Below are positions 28,001 to 31,000 of a stretch of DNA of 64,000 nt, in pieces. The notes under the pieces are model-generated. The model was not told the DNA's origin, ran no database searches, and worked only from the letters and a program-made list of their open reading frames with translations. Position 1 is the stretch's first letter. Every line of letters begins with the position of its first letter. Source of the DNA: Ylistrum balloti (taxonomy: Eukaryota); the NCBI RefSeq assembly GCF_031769215.1, contig NW_026782015.1, forward strand, positions 1,798,001-1,862,000, in the 5' to 3' direction. Made by a program: the position numbers and the translations under genes.

Positions 28001-31000
28001 TTTCACTGGCTTAGCTGTAGGTTCTTGAACATGAGAACTGGCAAAAGTTGTTGTGGAGAGCTGTGGTAAGCTGCTGACATCCCGTTTGGTTTTTTTACCA
28101 CCAACCAAATGTTGGTCGCCAAGTAGGACCTTTGGCTTGGATATGACAGGGCGGTTAAGACGACTGTTGATGACATCCTCATCATCTGTAATCAGTAATT
28201 TCTTAATGCCTTTCCCTCTTCTGCTCAATGTCATCCTGAAAAGTATTCCAATAGATAAGTTTTCAACAAAATTAAATTTCTACATCAACAAGACCACATT
28301 AGTATATCATAATGTCTTATTTTCTTACAAACATTATCAAGATTCAACAACAACAATGTATAACTTTCTCTGATTAAACTAGTATAAACATGGACCATCT
28401 ATACAAGATCAATAATGTCAAAGTACCCATCAATCAGATCAGTAAAGTCAAAATACCCATCAAACAAATCAGCTAAGAAGTTACAGGTCAAAGACATCAG
28501 AGAGAGAATCACTGAAGTTAAAAGTCAAAACAACAGATTGAGAACCAATGAACTTACTCAAGTGTCTTGAAATTCATTTTGAAGAACACTATAGAGACAG
28601 AGTTGTTGGTGAACTCTTTTACTGATGGTGACTGTAGAATGCACTTGCCCTGGTTGTCCTCCTGTAGAAATAAACAATGATTCTCTGTAGATAACACAGT
28701 AAATTTACTTACAGCAAAACAATGAGTTCAGCAAACCTAATCATGCATATTCAAAGGTTAAAACATCCAGCTGATATTATGTAACATTGGGAAAATACTA
28801 GCCACAAAATATCACTTGGCTGGAGAGAACTTCTCTTTAGTTCAATCAGTTGAGCATCAGACTAGTCAGTCAGAGATTCCAGGTTTGAACTCTAGCAGGT
28901 GCATTAAAATAAAATAATGACCTCTTTTACATTGACGCCCATGTAGGGACTGGGAAATAATACTTAGCAATACGTTCACAAGAATCACTGTAAGCAATAC
29001 TTTCACAAGCATTGCTGTAACTCCTGAAAACTCAAGGTCAAGTTATTTCCTGGAGGGGGAGTATGTAACTTGGTAAAATACTAGCTGCAAAATAACACTG
29101 AGCTGGAGAGAACTTCTGTTTAGCTTTAATGGTTACAGCACACATCAGACTAGTAAGCCAGAGGTCCTAGGTTTGAATCCTAGCAGGGGCATTAAAATAA
29201 AATAATGACCTCTGTTACATTACATTACTGTATTGAACATTTTGTGTTAACCAATCATAAGCTTTATTTCAAATCTTTGATCTGTGACAATATTGTTTTA
29301 AGTTAGTCGGTCAAACACTTATGTGATTAAATTGCAAACTGGCAGTAGTTTTTTCCCGCCAATAATATCTATTGGTAATTTCATGCAGAGTTTAGCAATT
29401 GTTTACAAATACATCCAAATCAGAACACATACCATACAGTTTAATACACAAGGAAACAGGTCACATATAATTTAGTTCTATGATACTAACAATAAAGTGA
29501 ACAAATCATGTAGATGTCTGATACCAGTAATACAGTGTACATATAATACAGATGTCTGATACCAGTAATACAGTGCACATATAATACAGATGTTTGACCC
29601 CAGTAATACAGTGTACATACCATGTAGCTTGATATTCCTTTACTGCCACTCTTGTCTAGTGTAAACCCAAACTGTAAAATTCAAATAAAAAAACTTTATT
29701 AACTTGTTATTTTTGTAAATTTTTTTCATAAGAGTCAAGAACACCATTTCCAAAATTCCCTATATTGTAAATATAAAGAGATCTGGTGGATCCCAGAAAT
29801 CTGACAGATTCCTACAGGAAAATCATGATTGCAGAACTCAAATATTTGAGTCCCTAATCAATGCCCTTTAAACAAAATTTGACTCTTTTTGTGAATGCAA
29901 TTTGGAAATCCCAATAAGTTAAATAAGTATTGTGTGACAAGATGTTTGATCTGTATAGTATTTTATCCCTGCTAAGCATACATATCTATCAAAATGTCTT
30001 AGTTTTGAATAATCGAAGTCATGATTATCCAATTATTGTATTGATCATTATAAGTCAGTTGATGTAATGATTTTTCTGATAGTTTAAAGATTAATAATAG
30101 TATTAATCATATGGTAGAAATGGAAGCCTAGCTCTACATTATAAAGAAATCCACATTACCATTGCATCTTTGTAATCAAAATCGTCCGTACTAGTGACAG
30201 CAAATAGCGTCATATTGACGACCAGGGTGCCTTTCTTCAGAAAGCCAAAAGTACTGAGGGGTATTTCTCGTCGCTCATCTGTCTGTAAATGCAAAGAAAA
30301 AAAAAGGTAATCAATATCATAAGTTTCTTGGTACAGTGGAACCCACTTGATATTTTGGAAATTATCTATGAACTACATATGACAAACAAAATTAGTTTTG
30401 ACGAATTTAGTTTTAGTTTTGTGATTCAATGGTCTGTAGTTGGTAATTATCTGCATTTTGTGTTAAAAATGGCCTGTCATGCAAGTCATAAAGCTTCGAC
30501 ATTTTTCATATCGAACTTTGTTTAGAAGCAAATATCTCAAAAACGTGTATCATTGTAGTAATCCTTTTAAATCCAAGGACATAACATACACACAATGACC
30601 CAACAGCATTCTATTCAATGTCAAGAATATAAGTACCAAAGGTTTCCTCTGTCCCCAGCACCAGATGTAAACACCATATTCTGGTGATGAGATAGAGGAA
30701 ATTGAGGCTACCAAGCTTGTCTTTTTTTTATAGACTATTCCTTTTCATGTAAGAGGTCTTGAATGGTTCTGAATATTTATCCACAATTTTATTTTGGTTA
30801 CTGTCGATAATCAAAATTCCTTCATATATACTGACCATGAAAAAATATTCTTTATAATTCAAACTTTTTTTCCCGAATTTTCTTGACTTCGTTTAGAGAG
30901 GGATTTTGAGATTAGGCCATTTTGTACAATAATATCCATCGTTTTTCCAATAATATTCAATTAATTTTCCGTTGTTTATGTCAGAAGCAATACGAAATTA

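What the first reader, a model, noticed from the sequence alone, without database searches (positions are those of the whole stretch)
28780..29219. Miniature LTR retroelement whose LTRs carry a tRNA-derived Pol III promoter
The structure is 152-156 bp TG...CA LTRs, a PBS one base after LTR1, about 130 bp of non-coding interior, and a PPT before LTR2. The family PBS TGGCGCCCATGTAGGGAC matches the known tRNA-Lys3 PBS TGGCGCCCGAACAGGGAC at 14/18. Each LTR holds TAGCTCAGTCGG..GAGCGTCAGACTAGTAAG..GGTTCGAATCC: A box, a CT-AGT-AA anticodon loop like tRNA-Thr(AGT), and B box. It is a SINE-like promoter inside an LTR parasite, analogous to plant Cassandra (5S) and, as I recall, the Helenus tRNA-LTR TRIMs. 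Four to five copies in 64 kb imply a very abundant family that may be unannotated or mis-annotated as SINE or tRNA. No clean TSD is visible at this copy.
Basis: partly seen in the sequence, partly recalled or inferred. Interest (0 to 1): 0.75.

Follow-up and report, generated by a model that had tools for sequence, protein, structure and literature searches.

The report
Decayed Helenus tRNA-bearing miniature LTR retrotransposon
This is an old, mutated copy of a 0.4-kb non-coding LTR retrotransposon whose terminal repeats contain a worn tRNA gene; the kind was described in 2024 as "Helenus" in scallops and oysters, so the find is real but not new.

Summary
Window 28780-29219 is LTR (152 bp), a T spacer, an 18-nt primer-binding site, a 132-bp non-coding interior, a purine tract and a second LTR (156 bp). 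The LTRs are 82% alike and each holds a tRNA relic.

Younger copies elsewhere in the genome (151-bp LTR, 104-bp interior, 406 bp in all) settle the mechanism:
- Of 21 full copies, 17 have perfect 4-bp target duplications.
- The two LTRs of one copy resemble each other more than LTRs of other copies.
- The primer site is a perfect 18-nt complement of the genome's own tRNA-Lys(UUU).

So this is a true LTR element, not tandem SINEs.

It is also known. Kojima 2024 (PMC10886601) named such elements Helenus, and four published scallop families have the same ends, primer site and purine tract. The scan has already reached this verdict on other DNA of this genome (s1-240631).

New here:
- Several Ty3/Gypsy families share the primer site.
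- Hybrid insertions carry a Gypsy-type 5' LTR joined through the primer site to a Helenus interior and 3' LTR. One has a perfect 4-bp duplication, which argues for reverse transcription in one particle.

Pol III activity remains untested. This copy's A and B boxes are mutated.

The parts
28780..28931 (+). 5' LTR (152 bp, TG...CA)
   Evidence: Direct repeat of 29064-29219, 82.4% identical. It is 81% identical to the LTR of a young genomic copy, L007.
28838..28892 (+). tRNA relic of LTR1: A-box relic 28838-28849, anticodon-loop relic CTAGTCA 28862-28868, B-box relic 28882-28892
   Evidence: Both boxes are mutated relative to the young copies (TAGCTCGATTGG and GGTTCGATTCC).
28933..28950 (+). Primer-binding site for tRNA-Lys(UUU), one mismatch; preceded by a T spacer at 28932
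   Evidence: The family form is an exact complement of the last 15 nt of the genome's tRNA-Lys(TTT) gene plus CCA.
28932..29063 (+). Non-coding interior (132 nt) with a 27-nt tandem duplication at about 28967-29020
   Evidence: No long open frame.
29052..29063 (+). Polypurine tract GGAGGGGGAG plus TA, abutting the 3' LTR
   Evidence: The same tract is present in young copies and in the published scallop Helenus families.
29064..29219 (+). 3' LTR (156 bp, TG...CA) with tRNA relic: A box 29121-29132, CTAGTAA 29150-29156, B box 29170-29180
34141..34627 (+). Second full copy of the same old subfamily. The first LTR base is mutated, and the interior is 189 nt because of an 80-90-nt internal duplication.
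   Evidence: Flanks AATT / AATG match at 3 of 4 positions.
56009..56208 (-). 5' part of a third copy: LTR, primer site at 56045-56062, and the start of the interior
51732..51926 (-). 3' part of the third copy: end of the interior plus the LTR. About 4 kb of minisatellite arrays separates it from the 5' part.
   Evidence: Outer flanks TTGT / TGGT match at 3 of 4 positions.
56324..56369 (+). Fragment of another LTR (positions 104-149)

Best explanation
The element is an old, inactive copy of a Helenus-type TRIM. That is a non-coding miniature LTR retrotransposon whose LTRs carry a tRNA-derived module.

Shown:
- It is copied by the standard LTR route. Reverse transcription is primed by host tRNA-Lys(UUU) at the primer site. 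Second-strand synthesis starts from the purine tract. Both LTRs are regenerated in each cycle. An integrase inserts the product and makes a 4-bp target duplication.
- The element encodes nothing, so the proteins must come from elsewhere.

Inferred:
- The proteins come from Ty3/Gypsy elements of the same genome that use the same primer. Hybrid insertions suggest that one such family (family C) is reverse-transcribed in the same particle.
- The tRNA relic (A box at LTR position 59, B box at 103) serves as an internal RNA polymerase III promoter. I give this about 55%. In this particular copy both boxes are mutated, so it is probably silent.
For: Target duplications:
- Of 21 full-length copies, 17 have perfect 4-bp duplications and the other 4 match at 3 of 4 positions. 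Three of the 17 are three-LTR forms.

LTR regeneration:
- LTRs within one element are 95.3% identical, against 93.2% between elements.
- There is no split into 5'-LTR and 3'-LTR lineages (5'-5' 92.9%, 3'-3' 94.5%, 5'-3' 93.7%). This is what regeneration of both LTRs predicts and what amplification of a linear dimer does not.

Primer site:
- It is an exact 18-nt complement of the 3' end of nine tRNA-Lys(TTT) genes. The reversed control pattern gave 0 matches.

tRNA relic:
- The A box is kept in 32 of 36 young LTRs and the B box in 24 of 36, with starts 43-44 nt apart.

Match to the literature:
- Published Helenus families of scallops have the same LTR ends, primer site, purine tract and tRNA-like core. 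Kojima reports a 4-bp duplication and a Gypsy link for animal Helenus.

Candidate partners:
- Family A has gag (PNMA) plus protease, RT, RNase H and integrase. Its LTR ends in CTGTTACA, followed by the same T spacer and the same primer site.
- Family C has the same primer site, and its gag is homologous to that of family A.
- The hybrid in L028 is a family C LTR (407 bp), the family C spacer TT, the primer site, then Helenus interior-LTR-interior-LTR. It is flanked by TAAC / TAAC.
- Further hybrids are in L070, L036 and L037.
Against: - This copy itself has no target duplication and only 82% LTR identity, so its history is inferred from relatives.
- No RNA evidence was obtained. The runs found are assembled contigs of coded organisms and show no transcript starts or ends.
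- No LTR folds as a tRNA by ARAGORN, and none matches Rfam tRNA at E <= 1. The 'tRNA' is therefore only a sequence relic.
- The roughly 57 nt upstream of the relic are as conserved across scallop families as the relic itself. This was judged by eye. Conservation therefore does not single out the Pol III boxes.
- The partner assignment rests on one hybrid with an independently defined LTR boundary (L028), one with a less certain boundary (L036), and shared termini.
Confidence: 0.9

Rival explanations
1. The same Helenus-type LTR element, but the tRNA relic is a passenger left by an old SINE or tRNA insertion. It is not a working Pol III promoter. Transcription would come from a Pol II promoter in the conserved first ~57 nt of the LTR, or from read-through.
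For: - The region upstream of the relic is as conserved between scallop families as the relic (by eye).
- There is no cloverleaf.
- There is no RNA evidence for Pol III.
- Kojima states that function is unproven.
Against: - The A and B boxes are kept at canonical spacing in most young LTRs and across Helenus families from fungi to animals.
- Young copies have almost no T-runs of 4 or more on the sense strand. In 18 copies there are 2, against 68 A-runs. This is weak evidence, because the published families as a set show no such avoidance.
Confidence: 0.35
2. Not an LTR element. Instead, tandem copies (1.5 units) of a tRNA-derived SINE or a short satellite, spread by LINE machinery or by unequal crossing-over.
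For: - Tandem forms exist (LTR-interior-LTR-interior-LTR).
- Forms with a single Helenus LTR also exist.
Against: - 4-bp duplications flank the whole LTR-interior-LTR unit in 17 of 21 copies.
- The ends are TG...CA, there is a perfect tRNA-complementary primer site and a purine tract, and there is no A-rich or LINE-like tail.
- 5' and 3' repeats do not form separate lineages.
- The three-LTR forms carry duplications too. That fits template switching before integration (PMC1950507) or later unequal recombination within one element.
Confidence: 0.03
3. A cluster of tRNA genes or tRNA pseudogenes.
For: Sequence similarity to the D arm, anticodon loop and T arm of tRNAs.
Against: - ARAGORN finds 0 tRNAs in the window and in 33 loci holding about 70 LTRs.
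- Rfam finds no tRNA match.
- The acceptor and anticodon stems do not pair.
Confidence: 0.01

Closest known systems
Helenus (Kojima 2024, PMC10886601), especially the scallop families Helenus-1_MiYe, Helenus-3_MiYe, Helenus-2_ArIr and Helenus-1_PeMa
   Same: - A TRIM with a tRNA-like module in each LTR, and a 4-bp target duplication.
- The LTR starts TGTAACCCTGGTAAA and ends CTCTGTTACA.
- The T spacer and primer site TGGCGCCCA(T/C)GTAGGGA are the same.
- The interior ends ...TTTCCTGGAGGGGGAGTA.
- The LTR tail of Helenus-1_MiYe (151 bp) is nearly the same as here.
   Different: - The dimensions of the young family here (151 / 104 / 406 bp) match no family in the paper's Table S1.
- Kojima aligned these primer sites to a sea-hare (Aplysia) tRNA-Lys-CTT with a gap. 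Here the match is gapless and perfect to the genome's own tRNA-Lys-TTT.
- The window copy belongs to an older subfamily with duplications in its interior.
Cassandra (plant TRIM with a 5S rRNA module in its LTRs) and Ajax (nemertean equivalent)
   Same: A non-autonomous LTR element whose LTR carries a Pol III-type small-RNA gene relic ('TRIMp3'). Tandem arrays occur.
   Different: The module is derived from 5S rRNA, not tRNA. These elements make 5-bp duplications and share no sequence with this one.
biv-TRIM (Satovic et al. 2019, PMC6934838)
   Same: A bivalve TRIM with solo repeats and tandem arrays.
   Different: - Its terminal repeats are 202-218 bp and its interior 77-80 bp.
- It has no clear primer site.
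- Its conserved motif TGATCCCAAAGGAC is absent from the window and from all held loci.
tRNA-derived SINEs (SINE2)
   Same: A tRNA-related head with A and B boxes, short length and high copy number.
   Different: SINEs have no LTRs, primer site or purine tract. They end in a LINE-like or A-rich tail and make variable duplications. None of that is seen here.
Complex and recombinant LTR elements formed during reverse transcription (Sabot & Schulman 2007, PMC1950507; review PMC6894440)
   Same: Three-LTR forms and hybrid-LTR forms flanked by a single target duplication, which implies they formed before integration. The second strand transfer relies on primer-site homology.
   Different: Here the hybrids join a non-autonomous tRNA-bearing TRIM to LTRs of other families that share only the 18-nt primer site.

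Membership tests
Helenus (tRNA-bearing TRIM) | Two short direct terminal repeats ending TG...CA around a short non-coding interior (311-1263 bp in all) | tested here: met
   440 bp here and 406 bp in young copies. The longest open stretch is 58 aa.
Helenus (tRNA-bearing TRIM) | tRNA-like sequence in the LTR with box A (TRGCY...YGG) and box B (GGTTC) | tested here: met
   Young LTRs keep the A box in 32 of 36 cases and the full B box in 24 of 36. In the window copy both boxes are degraded.
Helenus (tRNA-bearing TRIM) | Primer-binding site complementary to a tRNA, just downstream of the 5' LTR | tested here: met
   Perfect 18-nt complement of the genome's tRNA-Lys(TTT) plus CCA. The window copy has 1 mismatch.
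Helenus (tRNA-bearing TRIM) | Polypurine tract before the 3' LTR | tested here: met
   GGAGGGGGAG at 29052-29061.
Helenus (tRNA-bearing TRIM) | 4-bp target site duplication (animal Helenus) | tested here: met
   For the family, 17 of 21 are perfect. It is not met at the window copy itself (ATTA / TTAC), as expected for an old copy.
Helenus (tRNA-bearing TRIM) | Sequence relationship to published Helenus families | tested here: met
   Exact string matches for the primer site and an LTR motif in the paper's DataS1. The alignment to four scallop families was made by eye. No computed identity was obtained, because the published sequences could not be loaded as references.
Helenus / TRIMp3 | Transcription by RNA polymerase III from the LTR module | not testable with these tools
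   Only assembled contigs of public runs were on hand. The paper also leaves this unproven.
tRNA-derived SINE | Single unit with a 3' tail and variable-length duplications, without LTR, primer site or purine tract | tested here: not met
Functional tRNA gene | Cloverleaf recognised by tRNA finders | tested here: not met
biv-TRIM | 202-218-bp repeats and the conserved interior motif TGATCCCAAAGGAC | tested here: not met

The most novel reading that the evidence does not exclude
The 'one-LTR' Helenus forms are hybrid insertions. The plus-strand strong-stop DNA of another element would pair, through the shared 18-nt primer site alone, with Helenus minus-strand DNA inside one particle. That other element is either Gypsy family C or a 124-bp-LTR element that uses the same tRNA-Lys(UUU) primer.

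If this is right, the hybrids are genomic footprints of co-packaging. They would name the autonomous partner of a Helenus family directly. They would also show a route by which TRIMs swap LTRs, including the route by which a SINE-bearing LTR could have been acquired.
Probability: 0.5. Interest if true: 0.5.

Novelty: new member of a known kind. Interest (0 to 1): 0.27.

Why it matters
The element itself matters little.
- It confirms that Helenus-type TRIMs are abundant in this bivalve genome, with at least 1,811 first-look candidates for this one lineage.
- Such copies can be mis-annotated as SINEs or tRNA pseudogenes.

The useful additions concern how Helenus is mobilised, which the 2024 paper inferred only from primer-site similarity.
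- The primer site matches the host's own tRNA-Lys(UUU) exactly.
- Several Ty3/Gypsy families share it.
- Hybrid insertions with a single target duplication suggest that Helenus and a Gypsy family are reverse-transcribed together.

This gives a concrete and testable handle on the partnership between a TRIM and its autonomous element. Whether the tRNA relic really recruits Pol III remains the open question for the whole class.

Tried and rejected
- **Rfam and ARAGORN on the window and on about 70 LTRs.** Neither found a tRNA.
- **The 4 kb between the LTR halves at 51.9-56.0 kb as a possible autonomous element.** Rejected. It has no long ORFs, is not repeated in the genome and is mostly minisatellite arrays.
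- **Public sequencing runs for RNA evidence.**
  - Only Logan contigs of coded organisms were available, and the RNA label is itself a guess.
  - Coverage peaks on the conserved LTR core. Cross-species conservation explains that, so nothing can be said about transcript starts, ends or expression.
- **Avoidance of Pol III terminators.**
  - Young copies have 2 T-runs against 68 A-runs on the sense strand.
  - The published Helenus and Ajax set has 244 'tttt' against 215 'aaaa', so I do not rely on this.
- **Interior similarity between Helenus and Gypsy family A beyond the primer site.** Only a modest match next to the purine tract: 14 of 2000 shuffles score as high.
- **One-LTR forms as unfinished reverse-transcription products that never made the second jump.**
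  - L028, L070, L036 and L037 turned out to have a foreign 5' LTR instead.
  - L031, L034 and L035 remain unexplained. No LTR-like end and no duplication was found within about 520 bp upstream.
- **Pfam on the 5' open frames of family C.** No hit. Homology to the family A gag was seen only by BLASTP.
- **The third LTR_C-Helenus junction at C520:732790.** I did not try to get it another way.
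Full report
**1. What is at the coordinates**

Window 28780-29219 holds two direct repeats of 152 and 156 bp. They are 82.4% identical. Both begin TGTAAC and end (T/G)TTACA.

One base after the first repeat lies TGACGCCCATGTAGGGAC. This is one mismatch from the family form TGGCGCCCATGTAGGGAC. The 132-nt interior has no coding capacity (longest open stretch 58 aa). 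It contains a 27-nt tandem duplication and ends in GGAGGGGGAG-TA directly before the second repeat.

Each repeat holds a tRNA-like stretch, but in this copy it is worn.
- The A-box relics read TAGTTCAATCAG and TAGCTTTAATGG.
- The B-box relics read GGTTTGAACTC and GGTTTGAATCC.
- LTR1 has acquired a TTTT.

The flanks are ATTA and TTAC, so this copy has no target duplication.

The window holds other copies:
- a second full copy at 34141-34627;
- a third copy on the minus strand, split into 56009-56208 and 51732-51926;
- an LTR fragment at 56324-56369.

**2. Is it an LTR element or tandem SINEs?**

A search of the whole 648.5-Mb genome gave at least 1,811 first-look candidates. It returned 30 loci, most of them from a younger subfamily with a 151-bp LTR, a 104-bp interior and 406 bp in all. 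Three tests decide the question.

(a) Target duplications. Of 21 elements with complete ends, 17 have perfect 4-bp duplications. The other 4 match at 3 of 4 positions. Three of the 17 are LTR-interior-LTR-interior-LTR forms. The chance expectation is 1 in 256 per element.

(b) LTR relationships. The two LTRs of one element are on average more alike (95.3%) than LTRs of different elements (93.2%). 5' LTRs do not form a lineage separate from 3' LTRs. Regeneration of both LTRs in each cycle predicts this. A dimer copied as a linear unit would not show it.

(c) The primer site. A pattern that demands a tRNA T-arm in front of the complement of the primer site found nine exact matches and none for the reversed control. 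ARAGORN calls seven of the nine tRNA-Lys(TTT), sitting among tRNA-Gln and tRNA-Arg genes. The gene ends ...GTCCCTACATGGGCG. With CCA added, the family primer site is a perfect 18-nt complement.

The tandem-SINE reading is therefore rejected. None of about 70 LTRs is called a tRNA by ARAGORN or matches Rfam tRNA at E <= 1, so these are not tRNA genes either.

**3. The tRNA relic**

In young copies the A box TAGCTCGATTGG starts at LTR position 59 and the B box GGTTCGATTCC at position 103. The box starts are 43-44 nt apart. The A box is kept in 32 of 36 LTRs and the B box in 24 of 36.

The relic resembles the genome's tRNA-Lys(TTT) in the D arm, the 5' side of the anticodon stem and the T arm. 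Its loop reads CTAGTA, which is an AGT (Thr) anticodon context. Its acceptor and anticodon stems no longer pair.

Whether it drives Pol III could not be tested. The only public runs found are assembled contigs from coded organisms, and their RNA label is itself a guess. They show no starts or ends. Their coverage peak on the LTR core is explained by cross-species conservation.

Young copies almost lack T-runs on the sense strand (2 against 68 A-runs in 18 copies). The published Helenus set as a whole shows no such bias, so I give this little weight.

**4. Comparison with what is known**

[quoted passage not shown] The paper reports the following:
- animal Helenus makes 4-bp duplications;
- there are 51 families in pteriomorph bivalves;
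- some bivalve families look like tRNA-Thr;
- bivalve primer sites include tRNA-Lys;
- the mobilisers are suggested to be Gypsy elements.

The paper's sequence file contains four scallop families with matching features: Helenus-1_MiYe, Helenus-3_MiYe, Helenus-2_ArIr and Helenus-1_PeMa. They share the LTR start, the LTR end, the spacer, the primer site, the purine-tract region and the tRNA-like core. The LTR tail of Helenus-1_MiYe (151 bp) is almost the one seen here.

The dimensions 151 / 104 / 406 match no row of the paper's Table S1. This is most likely the orthologous lineage in another scallop-like species, which makes it a new member of a known kind.

biv-TRIM (PMC6934838) is a different element, and its signature motif is absent.

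The scan has already noted this family several times on other pieces of this genome. One follow-up (s1-240631) reached the same Helenus verdict. I reached it independently and agree.

**5. Who mobilises it**

I searched for the exact primer site followed by a non-Helenus interior. This found 13 places belonging to a handful of other LTR elements.

Family A (C1371 and C569, locus L061):
- Its 829-bp LTRs start TGTAGC and end CTGTTACA. The last 8 nt are the same as in Helenus.
- It has the same single-T spacer and the same primer site.
- It has a gag with a PNMA domain, and a pol ordered protease, RT, RNase H, integrase. That is the Ty3/Gypsy order.
- In L061 both frames are uninterrupted and the LTRs are 99.7% alike over the 626 bp available. 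The genome holds about six copies.
- Its sequence next to the purine tract resembles that of Helenus only modestly (14 of 2000 shuffles score as high).

Family C:
- It has a 340-415-bp LTR, TGTCAC...GTGTGACA, with a TT spacer.
- It shares the primer site.
- It has an open frame homologous to the N-terminal part of the family A gag (E = 6e-8).

**6. Hybrid insertions**

Several copies seemed to have only a 3' LTR. Their flanks are unrelated to one another, so they are independent insertions. Closer reading changed the picture for four of them.

- **L028.** In front of the primer site sits a complete family C LTR of 407 bp, 83% identical to the L071 LTR, followed by the family C spacer TT. Then come the Helenus interior, LTR, interior and LTR. 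The whole hybrid is flanked by TAAC and TAAC. Here the LTR_C start was fixed independently by homology.
- **L070.** It has the same LTR_C-to-Helenus junction but is truncated at its 5' end.
- **C520:732790.** This is a third such junction.
- **L036 and L037.** Both carry a different 124-bp LTR-like piece (TGTG...GTCACA) in front of the primer site. Their flanks are ATAT / ATAT and TTAT / ATAT.

A single duplication around a hybrid means the hybrid existed before integration. Recombination between two integrated elements would join two unrelated flanks.

The simplest route is an intermolecular second strand transfer. Plus-strand strong-stop DNA of element C (LTR, spacer and primer-site copy) would anneal through the shared 18-nt primer site to Helenus minus-strand DNA. 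This transfer is known to depend on primer-site homology (PMC6894440). Complex elements formed before integration are documented in grasses (PMC1950507).

If this reading is right, Helenus and family C were reverse-transcribed in one particle. The evidence is thin: one clean case, one probable case and three partial ones. I put it at about 50%.

Related oddities occur in both Helenus and Gypsy family A. Head-to-head palindromic junctions centred on the primer site are seen in L032 and L033 for Helenus and in L064 for family A. L031, L034 and L035 remain unexplained.

**7. Verdict**

The element is a decayed Helenus copy of an old subfamily, in a genome that also holds younger copies of the same lineage. 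The kind is published, so interest is low.

The modest additions are the exact tRNA-Lys(UUU) match, the named candidate Gypsy partners and the hybrid insertions.

All comparisons used real genomic copies.

Noticed in passing
window 51927-56008: A third Helenus copy (minus strand) has its two halves separated by about 4 kb that is almost entirely minisatellite arrays, with periods of 35, 55, 70, 89 and 100 bp. The 55-bp array has about 13 copies at 53702-54425. The stretch is not repeated elsewhere in the genome, apart from a repeat of about 90 bp.
   Followed up: partly
L028 (G000:C250:856102-859506), L070 (C465), L036, L037: Hybrid insertions with a foreign 5' LTR joined at the tRNA-Lys primer site to a Helenus interior and 3' LTR. 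The foreign LTR is either the Gypsy family C LTR or a 124-bp LTR-like piece. L028 and L036 have perfect 4-bp target duplications.
   Followed up: partly
L061 (G000:C1371:27900-36863) and G000:C569:1134064-1145994: A low-copy Ty3/Gypsy family with 829-bp LTRs, a PNMA-type gag and uninterrupted gag and pol frames in L061. Its LTRs are 99.7% alike. On C569 two units lie in tandem and share an LTR.
   Followed up: partly
L032, L033 (Helenus) and L064 (Gypsy family A, G000:C351): Head-to-head inverted junctions centred on the near-palindromic primer site (GGCGCC core). They occur in both the TRIM and the Gypsy family. The origin is unknown. It may be an aberrant reverse-transcription product or a repair product.
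   Followed up: no
L002, L004, L016: Three-LTR tandem Helenus forms (LTR-interior-LTR-interior-LTR), each flanked by one perfect 4-bp duplication (TTGG, TATA, TAAT).
   Followed up: partly
L039-L046 (G000:C448 and C1175): Repeated units that each hold tRNA-Lys(TTT), tRNA-Gln(CTG) and tRNA-Gln(TTG) genes, about 3.6-8 kb apart. This is a tandemly duplicated tRNA gene cluster.
   Followed up: no
L002:2996-3132: A long hairpin that gives sub-threshold Rfam matches to several miRNA precursor families (best 39 bits against a gathering score of 83). It is probably a MITE-like inverted repeat.
   Followed up: no
window 29456-29645: A 38-bp tandem repeat (4-5 units) lies 240 bp downstream of the element.
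   Followed up: no
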